A program made the translations under genes and the position numbers. The notes under the pieces are model-generated. The model saw only the letters and a list, made by a program, of their open reading frames with translations, was not told the DNA's origin and made no database searches. A stretch of DNA of 63,972 bases, filler included, from Octopus bimaculoides (taxonomy: Eukaryota): assembly GCF_001194135.2 (NCBI RefSeq). It is 6 parts of 6 records of this genome, joined end to end, with 100 filler letters (N's around TTAATTAATTAA, not from the genome) between each part and the next. Parts side by side here need not be neighbours in the genome. Positions count along the whole stretch, not along the records: positions 40,628 to 56,483 come from NC_069003.1; 5 more parts are not named here. One strand, 5' to 3'. This document shows positions 41,386 to 56,258 of the stretch, piece after piece; position 1 is the first letter of the stretch; each line of letters starts with the position of its first letter.

Positions 41386-42712
41386 ATCAGTTGGATCTTC
41401 GATACTCAACCAATTGGATCTTCGATATTCAACCAATTGGATCTTCGATACTCAGCCATTTGGATCTTCGATACTCAATCAGTTGCATCTTCGATATTCA
41501 ACCAATTGGATCTTCGATATTCAACCAGTTGGATCTTCGATACTCAACCAGTTGGATCTTCGATATTCAACCAGTTGGATCTTCGATACTCAACCAGTTG
41601 GATCTTCGATACTCAACCAGTTGGACCTTCGATACTCAACCAATTGGATCTTCGATATTCAACAAGTTGGATCTTCGATACTCAACCAGTTGGATCTTCG
41701 ATACTCAATCAGTTGGATGTTCGATACTCAACCAGTTGGATCTTCGATACTCAATCAGTTGGATCTTCGATACTCAATCAGTTGGATCTTCGATACTCAA
41801 GCAGTTGGATGTTCGATACTCAACCATTTCGATCTTCGATATTCAACCAGTTGGATCTTCGATACTCAACCACTTGGATCTTCGATACTCAACCAGTTGG
41901 ATCTTCGATACACAACCAGTTGTATCTTCGATACTCAACCAATTAGATCTTCAATACTCAATTGGATCTCTGATATTCAACCAACTGAATCTTCGATACT
42001 CAGCCATCTGGATCTTCGATACTCAATTGGATCTTCAATACTCAATTGGATACTCAATTCTCAATTCGATACTCAATCAGTTGGATCATCGATACTCAAC
42101 CAATTGGATCTTCGATATTCAAACAGTTGGATCTTCGATATTCAACCAATTGGATCTTCGATATTCAACCAGTTGGATCTTCGATACTCAACCAGTTGGG
42201 TCTTCGATTCTCAACCAGTTGTATCTTCGATACACAACCAATTGGATCTTCGATATTCAACAAGTTGGATCTTCGATACTCAACCAGTTGGATGTTCGAT
42301 ACTCAACCAGTTGAATCTTCGATACTCAATCAGTTGGATCTTCGATACTCAATCAGTTGGATCTTCGATACTCAAGCAGTTGGGTCTTCGATACTCAACC
42401 AATTGGATCTTCGATATTCAACCCGTTGGATCTTCGATACTCAACCAGTTGTATCTTCGATACTCAACCAGTTGGATCTTCGATACTCAACCAGTTGGAT
42501 TTTCGATACACAACCAGTTGGATCTTCGATACTCAACCAATTAGATCTTCAATACTCAATTGGATCTCTGATATTCAACCAACTGAATCTTCGATACTCA
42601 GCCATCTGGATCTTCGATACTCAATTAGATCTTCAATACTCAATTGAATCTTCAATACTCAACCAATCGAATCGTCAATACTCAACCAATTGGATCTTCG
42701 ATACTCAACCGT
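41386..42712. repeat. 23-bp minisatellite (GGATCTTCGATACTCAACCAGTT)n
   Basis: Directly visible period of 23, giving a 23-aa repeat in all three plus-strand frames. Confidence 0.97.
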
Positions 42713-42879: not shown

Positions 42880-43595
42880 TATGTATTTGTGTGTTTGTGC
42901 TTGTCCCCCACCATCGCTTGACAGCCGATGTTGGTGTGTTTACGTCCCCGTAACGTAGCTGTTTGGCAAAAGAGACCGATAGAATAAGTACTAGGCTTAC
43001 AAAGAATAAGTCCTGGGGTCGATTTGTTCGACTAAAGGTTGTGCTCCAGCATANNNNNNNNNNNNNNNNNNNNNNNNNNNNNNNNNNNNNNNNNNNNNNN
43101 NNNNNNNNNNNNNNNNNNNNNNNNNNNNNNNNNATGTATTTGTGTGTTTGTGCTTGTCCCCCACCATCGCTTGACAGCCGATGTTGGTGTGTTTACGTCC
43201 CCGTAACGTAGCTGTTTGGCAAAAGAGACCGATAGAATAAGTACTAGGCTTACAAAGAATAAGTCCTGGGGTCGATTTGTTCGACTAAAGGTTGTGCTCC
43301 AGCATAGCCACAGACAAATGGCTGAAACAAATAAAAGAATTAAAGTATATATATATAAATGTGAGTGTGTGTGTGTGTGCGTGTGTGCGTGTATGCTTTC
43401 CGCTTATCACCACTTGACAAACGGTGTTGGTGTGTTTACGTCCCGTGACTTAGCGTTCCGCAAAAATGACCCATAGAATAAGTACTAGGCTTAACAAATA
43501 TGAGTGCTGGGGTCGATCTGTTCGATAAAGGACCCTTCAAGGCAGTGCTCCAGTATGGCCGCAGTCAAACAACTGAAACAAGTAAATGAGTAAAA
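42880..43595 (+). mobile_element. Cluster of family A SINE 3' halves (one duplicated across a gap)
   Basis: Three copies of the tgtccccc...ggtgtgtttacgtcccc...gactgaaacaa tail. Confidence 0.75.
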
Positions 43596-47215: not shown

Positions 47216-47550
47216 NNNNNNNNNNNNNNNNNNNNNNNNNNNNNNNNNNNNNNNNNNNNNNNNNNNNNNNNNNNNNNNNNNNNNNNNNNNNNNNNNNNNN
47301 NNNNNNNNNNNNNNNNNNNNNNNNNNNNNNNNNNNNNNNNNNNNNNNNNNNNNNNNNNNNNNNNNNNNNNNNNNNNNNNNNNNNNNNNNNNNNNNNNNNN
47401 NNNNNNNNNNNNNNNNNNNNNNNNNNNNNNNNNNNNNNNNNNNNNNNNNNNNNNNNNNNNNNNNNNNNNNNNNNNNNNNNNNNNNNNNNNNNNNNNNNNN
47501 NNNNNNNNNNNNNNNNNNNNNNNNNNNNNNNNNNNNNNNNNNNNNNNNNN

Positions 47551-47582
<32 letters not shown>

Positions 47583-47588
<6 letters not shown>

Positions 47589-48057
47589 AGTTGTATGCTG
47601 TCAACTTAATGTGACAGTCACATGAAGGGAATAATACTACTCCTATTTAGCCCTAGGAAGCAGTACCGCTTCCCGTCAGTTTTGACACATTTCCTGTGTC
47701 CTTATGTTTACAAGGTGGAGACAAGCACTTCCACTTAGCTAAGACTGCATCCAGAGACATGTTTCTGAGTCTTTGCTCGTCATCAGTCTGGAGTAGCAAT
47801 GATCTGCTAGTCAAGCTCTCGTAAACATAATAATTCTAGTGAAACACATTCACTGATTTCAAAATTAGAAATAATACATTTCTAAATCTCTCAGATTTAT
47901 GCAGTAGTGATGCGATAAAGTAGCTGCATGCTGTCAACTTAATGTGACAGTCCCATGAAGGGAATAATGCTACTGCTATTTAGCTCTCGGAAGCAGTACC
48001 GCCTCCTGTCGGACTTCACACATTTCCTGTGTCCTTATGTTTACAAGGGGGAGACAA
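47583..48057 (-). mobile_element. Partially tandem 333-bp unit carrying a hammerhead (retrozyme or Penelope pseudo-LTR-like)
   Basis: Direct repeats of about 142 bp at 47583-47724 and 47916-48057 (offset 333) with the hammerhead between them. Flanked on both sides by TA/CA microsatellites. Confidence 0.55.
47750..47792 (-). ncRNA. Candidate minimal type I hammerhead ribozyme with variant core
   Basis: Minus-strand RNA: UCCAGA CUGAUGA C GAG CAAAGA CUC A GAAA CAU GUC^ UCUGGA. It has a perfect 6-bp stem I, a 3-bp stem II, a palindromic ACAUGU stem III region and a GUC triplet. Confidence 0.7.
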
Positions 48058-48076
48058 ATATACATATATATGCATT

Positions 48077-48174
<98 letters not shown>

Positions 48175-49751: not shown

Positions 49752-50206
49752 TGGATCTTCGATACTCAACCAATTGGATCTGCGATACTCAACCATTTGG
49801 ATCTTCGATATTCAACCAGTTGGATCTTCGATACTCAACCATTTGGATCTTCGATATTCAACCAGTTGGATCTTCGATACTCAACCAGTTGGATCTTCGA
49901 TATTCAACCAATTGGATCTTCGATATTCAACCAGTTGGATCTTCGATACTCAACCAGTTGGATCTTCGATACTCAACCAGTTGGATCTTCGATACTCAAT
50001 CAGTTGGATCTTCGATATTCAACCAGTTGGATCTTCGATACTCAACCAGTTGGATGTTCGATACTCAACCATTTCGATCTTCGATATTCAACCAGTTGGA
50101 TCTTCGATACTCAACCAATTGGATCTTCGATACTCAACCAGTTGGATCTTCGATATACAACCAGTTGGATCTTCGATACTCAACCAATTAGATCTTCAAT
50201 ACTCAA
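49752..50206. repeat. Second array of the same 23-bp minisatellite
   Basis: Same unit and orientation, ending at an N gap. Confidence 0.95.
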
Positions 50207-50563: not shown

Positions 50564-50602
<39 letters not shown>

Positions 50603-51592
50603 GTTTAACATCCGTTTTCCATGCTGGCATGAGCTGGATGGTTTGACAGGAGTTGGACAGCTAGGGAGCTGTCCAGACTCCAGTTATCTGTTCTGGCATG
50701 GTTTCGATGGCTGGATGACCTTTCTAATGCCGACCACTTTTCATAGTGTGCTGGGTGCGTTTTACATGCCACTGGTACATGTGCATTTATACAGCACCAG
50801 CATGAGTGCATTCACATTGGTTCAAGTGCATTTTATGCGACACTGGCACAAGTGCATTTTACATGGCACCAGTACCTGCAAAGGACATGCCTGTATGTAT
50901 GGATGGCTGCAATTTTATTTAGTGTCATAAATATGTAGTTGGCGTTAGGAAGGGCATCCAGCTGTAGAAACTCTGCCAAATCAGATTGTAGCCTGGTGTA
51001 GCCATCTGGTTTGCCAGTCCTCAGTCAAACCGTCCAACCCATGCTAGCATGGAAAGCGGATGTTAAACGACGGTGATGATGATATATATAGATATAGATA
51101 TATACATACATATACACACACACCTACATGTGTGTGTGTCTGTGTTTGTCCCCCACCACTGCTTGACAACTGGTGTTGGTGTGTTTACATCCCTGTATCT
51201 TAGCAGTTTGGCGAAGGGACAGTTAGAATAAGGGCATCCAGCTGTAGAAACTCTGCCAGATCAGATTGGAGCCTGGTGTAGTCATCCGGTTCGCCAGTCC
51301 CCAGTCAAATCGTCCAACCCATGCTAGCATGGAAAGCGGACATTAAATAATGATGATGATGAGTGTTCCGTTGATCGAATCAACTGGAACACTCATCATC
51401 GTAATCGACGGAGTGCCAGTCAGACGTGTGTAGGTAGACCATTAATAACATCCTCATGGGGATAGACTGACAGTTTCCATGTCTGTAATGCTGATGTTCT
51501 ATATCTGCATGAATTTGACCAACACCCCTAAAACACACACACACACACACAAAGCAAACTTGCAAGGACATTAAAATCTAGCCAAACCTTAC

Positions 51593-51838
51593 CTTGTTGT
51601 AACATAGCACACCCAATATAGATACAAACATCCCAAAGCAGTTGACTGGTGTAACAGGGTTGCGAAGCATCATAATGGATGCGGTTATGATGACAATTCT
51701 TTTCATGGCATTCGCTACAGCATAGCTAAGTGGGCTGATAAGAGCCAAGATGGTGAAAGCAATGAGATTTTGCAGAGTGTTGAAAAAGCCATCTAACAGC
51801 AGTAATATTAGAACAGTAGTGAGTTTTATATTGCTTGT
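51593..51838 (-). CDS. SLC35E1: Internal coding exon of SLC35E1, 82 codons
   Basis: Polypyrimidine tract then ttttgcag|ACA AGC ... TAC AAC AAG|gtaagg: 246 nt, phase 0-0, in frame with the 55953-56081 exon. It translates to [82 protein letters not shown], matching the SLC35E1 motif [26 protein letters not shown]...LRNPVT...LYNK. Upstream exons and the terminal exon were not found in this scaffold. Confidence 0.93.
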
Positions 51839-51870
51839 CTGCAAAAGAAAAAAAAGAAAAAAAATGATAC

Positions 51871-51906
<36 letters not shown>

Positions 51907-51925
51907 CGATGATGATGATGATGAT

Positions 51926-52483
51926 AAATGCCCTGATGCAATACCAGGCACTGGCTCTCATGGCTTCTGAATTTAACTGATTGGAAGTGTTATCGTGTAC
52001 ATGTTTTGTCTTGGTGTAAAAGATGGGCTACAGCAAATATTCTGCTCTGTAACACAGATTTGCTTGTCTGTTGCCTGACCGTAACCAGTTGAGCATGTCC
52101 CTTGGTGGTTGACGATATGTGCATCTCTGACCACGAGCAGAAGTAGTGAGGGAATATCATAGCCATGTGTTGAGAGCAATTCTTTGGGGTTTGAATAATT
52201 CACCTCTGGAAGCATGGCTGTTTCGTTCAACATTCATAAATAAACCTTATACAGGGACCTTTTGAGCAGGATGGGCTACTCGAAATGTAGAAAATTCAAA
52301 CTGGGCTCCACCTGTAATGTCATATGCTGTTTAACTTGATATGAGATCACCATGTCGCATACATATGGCTGTGATGCGTTTGCCTGGTGTACCCTTATGA
52401 CACGGGTAGTCATGATGGGTATAATGGGCTTCGTATATTTGTACCCGAGTGTCACTTTGATGGCATGCACTGCTCTCTCACTC

Positions 52484-53689: not shown

Positions 53690-54118
53690 CTAGGTGCATT
53701 CCAGAAGTTTTGAGACTTTTTCAGGAGAGACGTTTATTAATTTCAAAAAACGTACAGAAATAATTTCTTTCCATGTACGATCCTCCGACTTCAATGCCTT
53801 CGTAGCGCTCCAGCAACGTCATGAAGTTCCCATGGCAATCCTCTAAAATGGGGACCCTTGACACAGCCTCCTTCAGCTTGGAAAGCAGAAGGTCACAGGG
53901 AGCAAGGTCTGGATTGTGGGGAGAGTGAGGCACAATTTTGGATACTTTCTCTGTCAAGGAGTTCATTACCAGAGTGGAATTGTGGGAACTGCTGCTGCGT
54001 TGTCCTGCTGCAAGTACTCTGGTTTCTGTACAAAATCTCTTCCCAGATTCCCTTAAAACCTCCACAATGTACTCTTTGCTGACAGTTTGGCCAGTGGGGA
54101 ACCCAGTGGCTGTAAATG
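53690..54118 (-). mobile_element. Mariner transposase C-terminal remnant with terminal repeat
   Basis: HSPHNPDLAPCDLLLSKLKEA corresponds to the mariner YSPDLAPxDF motif. The end reads tactaggtgcattccagaagttttgagact (mariner-like TIR). Confidence 0.8.
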
Positions 54119-54124
54119 ATGCCC

Positions 54125-54500
54125 TTCATCATCGTTTAACGTCCGCTTTCCATGCTAGCATGGGTTGGACGATTTGACTGAGGACTGGTGAAACCGGATG
54201 GCAACACCAGGCTCCAATCTAAATTTGGCAGAGTTTCTACAGCTGGACGCCCTTCCTAACGCCAACCACTCAGAGAGTGTAGTAGGTGCTTTTACGTGTC
54301 ACCTGCACAAAGGCCAGTCAGGCGATACTGGCAACGGCCACGCTCGAAATGGTGTCTTTTATGTGCCACCCACACAAGCCAGTCCAGGGGCACTGGCAAC
54401 GATCTCGCTTGAAAATCCTACGAAGGCCAGTCAGGCGGTACTGGCAACGGCCACGCTCAAAATGGTGCATCTTATGTGCCACCCGCACAAGAGCCAGTCC
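54125..54500 (-). mobile_element. RTE-type 3' tail element with internal direct repeats
   Basis: catcatcgtttaacgtccgctttccatgctagcatgggttggacg tail. Homologs lie at about 50567-50900, 50935-51082, 51230-51362, 55518-55690 and 59018-59220. Confidence 0.7.
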
Positions 54501-54559: not shown

Positions 54560-55030
54560 AAACGGGAAGGATGAGAGGCAATCTTGATACTCATCTCTGT
54601 TGGTTATCAGGATGGAATTGTGGGGACTGCTGCATTGTCCTGATGCAGAGGCACCGGTTTTTATAACAAAATCTCTTCCTGAATTCCTTTAAAACTTCCA
54701 CAATGTACTCTTTGTTGACTGTTTGGCCAGAAGGAATCCACTGGATGTATATTATGCCCCTGCTGTAGAAAAAGGGATTAATCATAAGCTTCCCAATGGA
54801 TTTGCTTGGCCTCTTATGCCAGCACAAACCAGATGCCCAGATAATACAAATTAACCCATAAGCAATCTGGAGCATATAAGTTTCTGTAGCATTTCTTCCC
54901 AGTTTAACACAAAATTTATGGCATAACGAGCTTTCAAATTATCTTTACATTCCAACAACTGCATTCCGCAAGGTAGTCAGCTGACGAGCAGTGTTTAGCA
55001 GGGTGTGTTCAAAGAATTGTTATGGCTGTC
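54560..55030 (-). mobile_element. Second mariner transposase remnant
   Basis: FFYSRGIIYIQWIPSGQTVNKEYIVEVLKEFRKR matches the mariner DDD-domain segment and overlaps in homology with 54030-54115. Confidence 0.75.
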
Positions 55031-55436: not shown

Positions 55437-55736
55437 TTAAACAATTGCCGTATGGAAGACAGAAGTATGGAATACAGAAATGCAAAAAAGACCATTAACT
55501 TCATATAAAAAATTTACTGTTTGTTACATCATCATCATGATCCTCATTATCCTTCAATGTCTGTTTTCCATGCTGGCATGGGTTGGGCAGTTTGAGATGG
55601 AGCTGACCAGCTGGGAGCTGTTCAGACGCCATGTCTGTTTTGGCATGGTTTCTATGGCTAGATGAGCCTCCTGGTGCTAACCACTTTACAGAATGTGTGC
55701 ACGCGTGTGTGTGTTTGTTTTTTGCCTGTGTGCACG

Positions 55737-55784
<48 letters not shown>

Positions 55785-55952
55785 TGTGTGTGAGTGTGTT
55801 TGTATTTGTGTGTGTGTACCACATTTAAAACAAGTACTACCAAGAATCTCTTTACCTAACAACATTCCAAGGGGTGGGGAAGCCACAGTGCTCCAGCTTG
55901 ACCATGACCTGATGAGTGAAACAGATCAAAGAATAAAAGAGTAACCACTTAC

Positions 55953-56081
55953 TACAGTATCTATATTAATGAGTATTCTCCTGACATCGTATGTAAACCA
56001 GAAGGGGAAGAAGCAGAGGGCTGACCAGCGAGCTAGCATCACTAATAATCTCATATGGTGCATACCAGTATCTTTTAAACA
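55953..56081 (-). CDS. SLC35E1: Internal coding exon of solute carrier family 35 member E1 (triose-phosphate/nucleotide-sugar transporter family), 43 codons
   Basis: Minus strand reads ttttgcag|TGT TTA AAA GAT ... GAT ACT GTA|gtaagt: 129 nt, phase 0-0. It translates to CLKDTGMHHMRLLVMLARWSALCFFPFWFTYDVRRILINIDTV, which resembles human SLC35E1 VLRDSRIHHLRLLNILG...FFMIPTWVLVD (recalled from memory). Confidence 0.85.
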
Positions 56082-56258
56082 CTGCAAAATATTAATAAAA
56101 ACAACAACAAAAAAATGATAATAATAATAATAATAATAAATTATTTTACTGGCCACAAGGGCTTACATAAAACAACATGAAGAGACAAAGACAGGTGAAG
56201 AAAAGAAAGATGGACGATGGTCACGTGTGAGCAATGAGAGACAGAAAAATAGAAAGGG

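What the first reader, a model, noticed from the sequence alone, without database searches (positions are those of the whole stretch)
47583..48057. Hammerhead ribozyme inside a 333-bp partially tandem unit: candidate cephalopod retrozyme
Seen: the minus strand at 47792-47750 folds as UCCAGA-CUGAUGA-C-GAG(CAAAGA)CUC-A-GAAA-CAU-GUC^UCUGGA, with a perfect 6-bp stem I and a self-complementary ACAUGU in place of a normal stem III. It lies between two about 142-bp direct repeats 333 bp apart, and the block is embedded in TA/CA microsatellites. Established: minimal type I hammerheads with palindromic stem III act as dimers. They mark Penelope-like element terminal repeats and metazoan non-LTR retrozymes, whose tandem units of a few hundred nt can be processed to monomeric or circular RNAs. 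Inference: this is a member of a retrozyme or PLE-derived family that could yield a roughly 333-nt self-cleaved, possibly circular, RNA.
Basis: partly seen in the sequence, partly recalled or inferred. Interest (0 to 1): 0.85.

Follow-up and report, generated by a model that had tools for sequence, protein, structure and literature searches.

The report
Decayed hammerhead-bearing Penelope-type mini-retroelement
This is most likely an old, single insertion of a short non-coding retroelement of the Penelope-like / "retrozyme" kind that carries one minimal hammerhead ribozyme motif; that kind is already known in animals, and this copy cannot release a circular RNA by itself.

Summary
The minus strand at 47792-47750 reads UCCAGA-CUGAUGA-C-GAG(CAAAGA)CUC-A-GAAA-CAUG-UC^UCUGGA. 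All canonical hammerhead core bases are present, with a 6-bp helix I, a GUC cleavage triplet and a palindromic ACAUGU in place of helix III. It lies in a 476-bp block of 1.43 units of 333 bp. The two 143-bp repeats are 90% identical, and the block is inserted in a (TA)n microsatellite.

A relaxed descriptor expects about 0.0002 such motifs per 14 kb. A covariance model built from independent hammerheads, some of them beside Penelope-like element (PLE) ORF remnants, hits the piece only here (25.9 bits, E about 1e-6).

Three limits apply:
- There is only one hammerhead at the locus, so no unit-length RNA can be excised from it.
- Compared with the PLE minimal-hammerhead consensus (CUGAUGA-N-G…C-GAAA), this copy has one extra A before G12, so its activity is doubtful.
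- No second copy of the unit could be found, so family-level covariation, copy number and the "cephalopod" label remain untested.

Verdict: a probable decayed member of a known class (non-autonomous PLE derivative or non-LTR retrozyme). Interest is modest.

The parts
47582..48057 (-). Whole insertion: 476 bp, which is 1.43 units of a 333-bp element (RNA sense is the minus strand)
   Evidence: Direct-repeat family D3 with spacing 333. The pairwise alignment loses homology exactly at both microsatellite junctions.
47915..48057 (-). 5' copy (in RNA sense) of the 143-bp terminal direct repeat, pseudo-LTR-like
   Evidence: 90% identical to 47582-47724. 8 transitions and 6 transversions; K2P 0.105.
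47582..47724 (-). 3' copy (in RNA sense) of the 143-bp repeat. It ends ...CUACUUUAU and abuts (TA)n.
47750..47792 (-). Minimal type-I hammerhead motif: helix I 47787-47792 with 47750-47755; CUGAUGA 47780-47786; extra C 47779; helix II 47776-47778 with 47767-47769 (loop 47770-47775); extra A 47766; GAAA 47762-47765; palindrome ACAUGU 47757-47762; C17 47756
   Evidence: Read directly from the sequence. Only descriptor hit in the piece. Covariance model R1 gives 25.9 bits, E about 1e-6.
47755..47756 (-). Predicted self-cleavage site (GUC^U), between 47756 and 47755
   Evidence: Position relative to the conserved core. Cleavage itself was not tested.
47702..47830 (-). Long-range inverted repeat (47702-47727 with 47805-47830) that closes the hammerhead domain into a long hairpin
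   Evidence: Inverted repeat I23: 26 nt, 73% complementary. It forms in the MFE fold of 47700-47835 and of the circular monomer.
47598..47617 (-). 6-bp hairpin (CUGUCA/UGACAG) just upstream of the A/C-rich 3' end of the element. It is repeated at 47931-47950. Candidate site for reverse-transcriptase recognition or initiation (inference).
   Evidence: Sequence. Present in the circular MFE structure. The analogy is to the AC-rich stem-loop initiation site of the Anolis PLE PAc (PMC11167929).
47551..47584 (.). (TA)17 target microsatellite on the 3' side of the element. The TA-rich remainder lies on the other side at 48058-48079.
   Evidence: TRF; junction sequences.

Best explanation
The block 47582-48057 is one old insertion of a short (333-bp unit) non-coding retroelement. 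The element is a non-autonomous derivative of Penelope-like elements (PLEs); when such elements are tandem they are called non-LTR retrozymes.

Proposed mechanism (inferred, not shown here). A multimeric or circular RNA of the element was copied by a PLE reverse transcriptase/GIY-YIG endonuclease supplied in trans. Priming occurred at a nick in a (TA)n microsatellite, with microhomology at ...UUUAU. Reverse transcription ran for more than one unit length. That left a 143-bp terminal direct repeat (a pseudo-LTR) around a 190-bp segment that carries one minimal type-I hammerhead.

In the parent family, the hammerhead would cut multimeric transcripts at GUC^U. Cutting would happen only when two copies pair through the palindromic ACAUGU to build a shared helix III. 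The resulting unit-length RNAs could then be ligated into highly self-paired circles.

This particular copy is probably inert:
- It holds a single hammerhead.
- Its two repeats have diverged by about 10%.
- It is CpG-depleted.
- It carries an extra A between helix II and G12.
For: - Motif: a complete hammerhead core, a 6-bp helix I, GUC and a palindromic helix III. Chance expectation is about 0.0002 per 14 kb.
- Dimer dependence: the isolated monomer prefers a non-hammerhead fold (-9.1 against -6.3 kcal/mol). The ACAUGU self-duplex is worth -6.0.
- Unit properties: 333 bp, 38.7% GC, CpG 5 observed against 12.5 expected. The circular monomer has MFE -94 kcal/mol, z = -4.2 on the hammerhead strand and -3.2 on the other strand. 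Both fit the retrozyme description of about 170-400 nt, under 45% GC and highly self-paired (PMC7229834).
- Insertion: a partial tandem with TA-rich microsatellite on both sides. This fits the partial-tandem insertions of PLEs and their (TA)n/AT-rich target bias (PMC8557442, PMC11167929).
- Independent comparanda: more than 120 metagenome contigs carry hammerheads with the same CUGAUGA…GAAAC-AUGUC design. Their helices I and II covary strongly: 87.5% of cells paired against 29-46% when partners are slid, and covariation score 0.714 against 0.147 or less. One lies 355 nt downstream of an RT ORF that also has a GIY motif, and six more contigs hold similarity to that ORF's C-terminal region, which includes the GIY motif. 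Many occur as head-to-head pairs or as same-strand repeats 351-920 bp apart.
- Model test: the model built from 63 of these hits the window piece only at 47749-47793(-).
- Published link: a 2026 preprint ties non-LTR retrozymes to PLE pseudo-LTRs (10.64898/2026.07.22.740005).
Against: - No second copy of the 333-bp unit was found in the piece, in a relative's contig or in any collection searched. Family membership therefore rests on one sequence.
- No PLE RT/EN remnant lies in the 15.9-kb piece.
- The helix II/core junction deviates from the class consensus. Among 56 unselected hammerheads in the comparison contigs, 51 read C-C-GAAA with G10.1-C11.1 directly next to G12. The window has an additional A.
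- Rfam hammerhead models give no hit even at E<=10. However, they also miss the covariation-supported hammerheads of the comparison contigs.
- The pattern used to collect the comparanda was derived from the window motif, so the covariance-model score is partly circular.
Confidence: 0.7

Rival explanations
1. A chance hammerhead-like string inside an unrelated local duplication or an unclassified interspersed repeat. There is no ribozyme ancestry.
For: In a gigabase genome a relaxed descriptor would still give chance hits, at about 0.0065 per 14 kb without the palindrome requirement. The motif fails the strict consensus at the helix II junction. There is no Rfam hit. No other copies were found.
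Against: Several independent features coincide: a full core, a 6-bp helix I, the palindromic ACAUGU shared with hammerheads from contigs that carry PLE ORF remnants (47 of 56 unselected copies), more-than-unit-length structure, a (TA)n target, low GC, and a strongly self-paired unit.
Confidence: 0.1
2. A live source locus. It belongs to an active retrozyme family whose transcripts dimerise in trans with other copies, self-cleave and circularise into a 333-nt RNA.
For: All core bases are intact. The self-paired circular fold has z = -4.2. The helix III design is that of the axolotl HHR_Amex1 retrozyme, which has a 330-bp unit and cleaves mainly as a dimer (PMC7229834).
Against: There is one hammerhead only, so a second cut is impossible on a transcript of this locus. 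The repeats have diverged by 10% and CpG has decayed, which indicates age. There is an extra A at the catalytic core/helix II junction. PLE minimal hammerheads cleave poorly even as dimers (PMC4209133).
Confidence: 0.1
3. The visible edge of a larger structure, either a longer tandem array or a full PLE, that the draft assembly truncated or collapsed. A 335-N gap at 47216-47550 lies 34 bp from the element.
For: The assembly is gappy, with 8 N-runs in 15.9 kb. It also contains an exact 173-bp duplication across one gap. PLE tandem and inverted structures are known to break short-read assemblies (PMC8557442).
Against: Homology to the unit stops cleanly at microsatellite sequence on both sides. 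(TA)17 separates the element from the gap.
Confidence: 0.1

Closest known systems
Minimal hammerheads of Penelope-like elements (Cervera & de la Peña 2014, PMC4209133)
   Same: The type-I core is the same. Helix I is short and open, with no evident loop-loop contacts. There is an extra nucleotide after A9 (C47779). Helix II is closed by a G…C pair. Positions 15.2-16.2 are palindromic, so helix III can form only between two copies. The same GAAAC-AUGUC design is seen in metagenome contigs, several of which carry PLE ORF remnants.
   Different: There is one additional A (47766) between C11.1 and G12. Helix II has only 3 bp, against the usual 4-8. The first helix I pair is A-U, whereas it is C-G in 54 of 56 unselected comparison hammerheads. 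No RT/EN ORF or recognisable PLE body lies nearby.
Non-LTR retrozymes of metazoans, e.g. axolotl Rtz_331/HHR_Amex1 and mussel retrozymes (PMC7229834)
   Same: The unit size matches (333 against about 330 bp). GC is below 45% and the monomer is strongly self-paired. Helix III is a single A-U pair capped by a palindromic tetraloop, which predicts dimer-dependent cleavage.
   Different: Retrozymes are defined by tandem arrays with a hammerhead in every unit and by abundant circular RNAs. Here there are 1.43 units with one hammerhead, and no expression data. Canonical retrozyme hammerheads have loop 1-loop 2 tertiary contacts, which are not evident here.
Schistosome Sm-alpha/Sj-alpha SINE-like elements and newt satellite 2 hammerheads (cited in PMC6765202, PMC4209133)
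   Same: These are short non-coding repeats of a few hundred bp that carry a type-I hammerhead with a weak helix III. A Box-A-like 11-mer (TAGCTAAGTGG) lies 14 nt 3' of the cut site, recalling the pol III promoter boxes of Sm-alpha.
   Different: No tRNA-like structure was found (no tRNA hit), and I did not recognise a Box B by eye. The Box-A match is a single post-hoc observation.

Membership tests
Hammerhead ribozyme, type I | Conserved core C3-U4-G5-A6-N7-G8-A9, G12-A13-A14, A15.1/U16.1, and H17 at the cleavage site | tested here: met
   CUGAUGA 47786-47780, GAAA 47765-47762, U 47757, C17 47756.
Hammerhead ribozyme, type I | Helix I formed by the sequences flanking the core, with the 5' and 3' ends emerging from helix I | tested here: met
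   UCCAGA/UCUGGA, 6 Watson-Crick pairs. It is extended by a long-range inverted repeat, 47702-47727 with 47805-47830.
Hammerhead ribozyme, type I | Helix II closed by G10.1-C11.1 directly adjoining A9 and G12 | tested here: inconclusive
   A 3-bp GAG/CUC helix is flanked by C47779 and A47766. It reads either as a C·A mismatch at 10.1/11.1, or as G10.1-C11.1 with one extra nucleotide on each side.
Hammerhead ribozyme, type I | Match to the Rfam hammerhead covariance models | tested here: not met
   No hit at gathering score or at E<=10 on 550 nt. Control: the same models also miss the covariation-supported hammerheads in L004, L022, L039, L088 and L096, so this test has little power for minimal variants.
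Hammerhead ribozyme, type I | Site-specific self-cleavage | not testable with these tools
   Needs in vitro transcription of monomer and dimer constructs.
PLE minimal hammerhead (min-HHR) | One nucleotide between A9 and G10.1 | tested here: met
   C47779. It is U in 55 of 56 unselected comparison hammerheads and C in 1 of 56.
PLE minimal hammerhead (min-HHR) | Palindromic 15.2-16.2/loop 3, so that helix III forms only in a dimer | tested here: met
   ACAUGU 47762-47757. The same hexamer occurs in 47 of 56 unselected comparison hammerheads. The monomer hammerhead fold is less stable than an alternative fold.
PLE minimal hammerhead (min-HHR) | Match to a covariance model built from hammerheads collected from contigs that include PLE ORF remnants | tested here: met
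   R1 gives 25.9 bits, E about 1e-6, and this is the only significant hit in the piece. Caveats: the training set was collected with a pattern derived from this motif, and the score lies at the low end of the range of class members (21-65 bits).
PLE minimal hammerhead (min-HHR) | Location in the pseudo-LTR of an element encoding RT plus GIY-YIG endonuclease, or in a truncated copy of one | tested here: not met
   No RT/EN similarity in the 15.9-kb piece (ORF list; tblastn with the L004 PLE ORF). The element is non-coding, and the hammerhead lies in the unique segment 25 nt from the 3' repeat.
PLE minimal hammerhead (min-HHR) | Consensus families with compensatory changes within the same genome | not testable with these tools
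   The source genome is not in any searchable collection, and no other copy was found.
Non-LTR retrozyme | Head-to-tail tandem of at least 2 units, each with a hammerhead | tested here: not met
   1.43 units and a single hammerhead.
Non-LTR retrozyme | Unit of about 170-400 bp, GC below 45%, highly self-paired monomer | tested here: met
   333 bp and 38.7% GC. Circular MFE -94 kcal/mol, z = -4.2.
Non-LTR retrozyme | Expression as linear and circular unit-length RNAs | not testable with these tools
   No transcriptome data available.

The most novel reading that the evidence does not exclude
The unit may represent a still unreported family of retrozymes in this (possibly cephalopod) genome that produces about 333-nt circular RNAs. 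It would have a hammerhead variant that tolerates an extra purine between helix II and G12. In addition, this sense-oriented copy, probably intronic in an SLC35E-like gene, might conditionally cleave the host pre-mRNA when a second copy pairs with it.
Probability: 0.1. Interest if true: 0.55.

Novelty: new member of a known kind. Interest (0 to 1): 0.3.

Why it matters
If confirmed genome-wide, it would add this lineage to the list of animals with hammerhead-bearing PLE derivatives. It would also give one more dated example of insertion at more than unit length into a microsatellite. That is useful for repeat annotation, but it does not change the current picture of these elements. The only potentially instructive detail is the extra A at the core/helix II junction. 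If that A belongs to the family consensus rather than to this copy's decay, it would define a tolerated core variant worth testing biochemically.

Tried and rejected
- Rfam at gathering score and at E<=10 gave no hammerhead. I treat this as uninformative after the control.
- Looking for more copies of the unit gave nothing. I tried sensitive self-BLAST of the piece and of the relative's contig L001; two protein-database searches with stop-free translations of the unit; a family-specific hammerhead pattern in metagenome, prokaryotic-genome and viral contigs; and a 26-mer of the repeat in genome and viral contigs.
- An orthologous-locus comparison failed. The closest available relative (ENA ERZ21867824 contig, L001) aligns only in two exon-like blocks at 73-77% identity, so the insertion site cannot be compared.
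- I first read the more than 120 metagenome hits to CTGATGANG…CAGAAACATGTC as proof that the extra A is a natural architecture. I rejected this. A structural alignment shows that A replaces C11.1 in those copies, and it occurs in only 1 of 56 unselected neighbours. It is therefore a minority mutational variant.
- The tRNA-derived SINE idea found little support. ARAGORN finds no tRNA, and only a Box-A-like 11-mer matches.
- The Lünse et al. 2017 paper on dimeric PLE hammerheads (PMC5785218) is not held.

Full report
**1. What is in the sequence**

Read on the minus strand, 47792-47750 is UCCAGA CUGAUGA C GAG CAAAGA CUC A GAAA CAUG U C | UCUGGA. It contains every conserved hammerhead position:
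- C3-A9 is CUGAUGA (47786-47780).
- G12-A15.1 is GAAA (47765-47762).
- U16.1 is 47757 and C17 is 47756.

It also has a perfect 6-bp helix I (47792-47787 with 47755-47750). Helix III is reduced to A15.1-U16.1 around CAUG, so positions 15.1-16.1 read as the palindrome ACAUGU.

Helix II is a 3-bp GAG/CUC stem with a CAAAGA loop. It is flanked by C47779 and A47766, which cannot form a standard pair.

The motif sits in a block bounded by two 143-bp direct repeats, 47582-47724 and 47915-48057. They are 90% identical and 333 bp apart. Homology stops at (TA)17 on one side and at ATATACATATATATGCAT…(AC)37 on the other. The block is therefore 1.43 units of a 333-bp element inserted in a TA microsatellite.

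**2. Is it more than chance?**

I ran a relaxed descriptor: CUGANGA, helix II of at least 3 bp with an optional unpaired closing position, GAAA, UH, and helix I of at least 4 bp.
- It finds only this site in the 15.9-kb piece, and none in a 19.7-kb contig of a related animal.
- In 6000 Markov simulations of the piece it gives 0.044 hits per simulation, 0.0065 with helix I of at least 6 bp, and 0.00017 when helix III must also be palindromic.
- The descriptor was written after seeing the motif, and a gigabase genome would still contain chance matches. The motif alone is therefore suggestive, not decisive. The context carries the argument.

**3. Structure of the RNA**

- The isolated 43-nt motif prefers a fold that sequesters part of the core (-9.1 kcal/mol) over the hammerhead fold (-6.3). 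Closing a one-pair helix III costs a further 4.5 kcal/mol. Two copies can pair ACAUGU with ACAUGU for -6.0 kcal/mol. This matches the published behaviour of newt, axolotl and PLE hammerheads, which are active mainly as dimers (PMC4209133, PMC7229834).
- A 26-nt inverted repeat (47702-47727 with 47805-47830) encloses the hammerhead.
- A 333-nt monomer permuted from cut site to cut site and folded as a circle has MFE -94 kcal/mol. That is z = -4.2 against dinucleotide shuffles, compared with z = -3.2 for the complementary strand.
- The unit has 38.7% GC and is CpG-depleted, with 5 observed against 12.5 expected.

**4. Search for relatives of the unit**

None was found.
- There is no other copy or fragment in the piece or in L001.
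- Two protein-database searches with stop-free translations of the unit returned nothing.
- Family-specific DNA patterns returned nothing in metagenome, prokaryotic-genome or viral contigs.
- The neighbouring gene fragment is a TPT/SLC35E-type exon at 51578-51961(-) (Pfam PF03151, 84.9 bits). Its best relative is an unnamed 175-kb ENA contig at 86% amino-acid identity. Only two exon-like blocks of that contig align to the piece, at 73-77% nucleotide identity.
- The source genome and its close relatives are therefore outside what I can search. Stem covariation within the family, copy number and the "cephalopod" label remain untested.

**5. Independent comparanda for the ribozyme**

- In 75 of 124 matches, the flanks (which are not part of the pattern) form a helix I of at least 4 bp. 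About 2% would be expected by chance.
- Sixty-three distinct sequences align cleanly. They show strong covariation in both helices: 87.5% of cells are paired against 29-46% when partners are slid, and the covariation score is 0.714 against 0.147 or less. No shuffle out of 500 reached the observed values.
- One contig (L004) has an ORF with an RVT_1 match (E 1.5e-6, 28.5 bits, just under Pfam's 29.6-bit cut-off) followed by a GIY motif. The hammerhead lies 355 nt downstream on the same strand. Six more contigs show similarity to the C-terminal region of that ORF, which includes the GIY motif.
- Fifty contigs carry two or more hammerheads, commonly as head-to-head pairs 50-350 bp apart or as same-strand repeats 351-920 bp apart. 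I read these as PLEs and their short derivatives. I did not identify the host organisms.
- A covariance model built from the 63 sequences finds 245 hammerheads in 99 contigs. With filters off, in the window piece it finds only 47749-47793(-), at 25.9 bits and E about 1e-6. The next best hit has 12.9 bits.
- The collecting pattern came from the window motif, so the core contributes circularly to that score. The helices do not.

**6. A correction that matters**

I first took these hits as evidence that the extra A before GAAA is a natural design. The structural alignment shows otherwise.
- Among 56 hammerheads in the same contigs that were not selected by the pattern, 51 read …C-C-GAAAC. This is the published PLE min-HHR consensus: CUGAUGA, one extra nucleotide (U), G10.1…C11.1, GAAA. 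Only 1 of the 56 has A.
- In the selected copies, A replaces C11.1, so they are a minority mutational variant.
- The window motif equals that consensus (with C as the extra nucleotide and G-C closing helix II) plus one additional A at 47766. Alternatively it has a C·A mismatch at 10.1/11.1.
- The two terminal repeats have diverged by K2P 0.105, so one or two mutations in a 43-nt motif are expected. Whether the A is ancestral cannot be decided from a single copy.
- The palindrome ACAUGU is present in 47 of the 56 unselected copies, so it is a genuine class feature shared with the window motif.
- Rfam's hammerhead models detect neither the window motif nor these covariation-supported hammerheads. 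Their silence therefore carries little weight.

**7. Interpretation**

The best-supported reading is a single, old insertion of a non-autonomous PLE-type element.
- The more-than-unit length (1.43 units) needs a multimeric or circular template, or the partial-tandem mode of PLE integration.
- The TA-microsatellite target fits the (TA)n/AT-rich preference reported for PLE endonucleases (PMC8557442, PMC11167929).
- The RNA-sense 3' end (…CUACUUUAU next to (AU)n) offers microhomology for target-primed synthesis. It is preceded by a 6-bp hairpin and an A/C-rich tail, reminiscent of the AC-rich stem-loop where the Anolis PLE initiates. This point is an inference.
- This locus has one hammerhead, so it cannot release a 333-nt RNA from its own transcript. 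It fails the defining tandem criterion of retrozymes. With its irregular core junction it is probably catalytically weak or dead.

**8. Rivals**

- A chance motif in an unrelated repeat (about 0.1).
- A live source copy acting in trans (about 0.1).
- The edge of a larger array or PLE hidden by the adjacent 335-N gap (about 0.1). The assembly is gappy and shows at least one artefactual exact duplication across a gap.

**9. Novelty**

Minimal dimeric hammerheads in PLEs, and short hammerhead-bearing tandem or partial-tandem derivatives, are well documented in many animal phyla, including molluscs (PMC4209133, PMC7229834). This is at most a new member of a known kind, and this copy is probably a relic.

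Noticed in passing
window 51578-51961 (-) and 55925-56088: There is a TPT/SLC35E-type exon (Pfam PF03151, 84.9 bits) and a second block conserved with ENA contig L001. Similarity to the relative's ORF (P0001) ends right after …CYNK, where both sequences continue with a valine codon (GTN), so I infer a splice donor there. If so, the hammerhead element, 3.5 kb downstream and in the same orientation, is probably intronic and would be co-transcribed in sense.
   Followed up: partly
window 41388-42710 and 49752-50206: Two arrays of the same 23-bp satellite (CAGTTGGATCTTCGATACTCAAC), with about 59 and about 20 copies, give long spurious ORFs. The second array runs into an N gap.
   Followed up: no
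window 50935-51082, 51230-51362, 54126-54269 (also 50588-50772, 55527-55697): A short interspersed repeat of about 130-145 bp is present in at least three copies at about 90% identity, in both orientations, around the SLC35E-like exon. It has no Pfam match and is unrelated to the hammerhead unit.
   Followed up: partly
window 54591-54875 (-), similar to 53966-54124: A mariner-type transposase fragment (Pfam Transposase_1, 25 bits against a 24-bit cut-off), with a second degenerate copy nearby at 79% nucleotide identity.
   Followed up: partly
window 42881-43053 and 43134-43306: A 173-bp stretch is duplicated at 100% identity on either side of an 80-N gap. This is most likely an assembly artefact.
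   Followed up: no
window 47731-47741 (-) and 51723-51733 (+): The 11-mer TAGCTAAGTGG fits the pol III Box A consensus TRGCNNAGTGG. It lies 14 nt 3' of the predicted cleavage site, and the identical 11-mer occurs antisense inside the SLC35E-like exon. Two matches were found against 0.11 expected in the window. There is no tRNA-like fold, and I did not recognise a Box B by eye.
   Followed up: partly
loci L002-L121 (JGI/ENA metagenome contigs), e.g. L037 3756-3801(-)/3918-3963(+), L028, L120: In head-to-head hammerhead pairs on these PLE-type contigs, one member often carries A at position 11.1 (a G·A mismatch) while its partner has the canonical C. Among unselected copies A is rare (1 of 56). 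I did not examine whether the asymmetry is biological or only a product of how the contigs were selected.
   Followed up: partly
L088 860-905(-) and 1211-1256(-); L022 1546-1594(-) and 1996-2044(-): Same-strand hammerheads spaced 351 and 450 bp apart lie on short metagenome contigs. These are retrozyme-like short tandem units of the same hammerhead class, in unidentified hosts.
   Followed up: no
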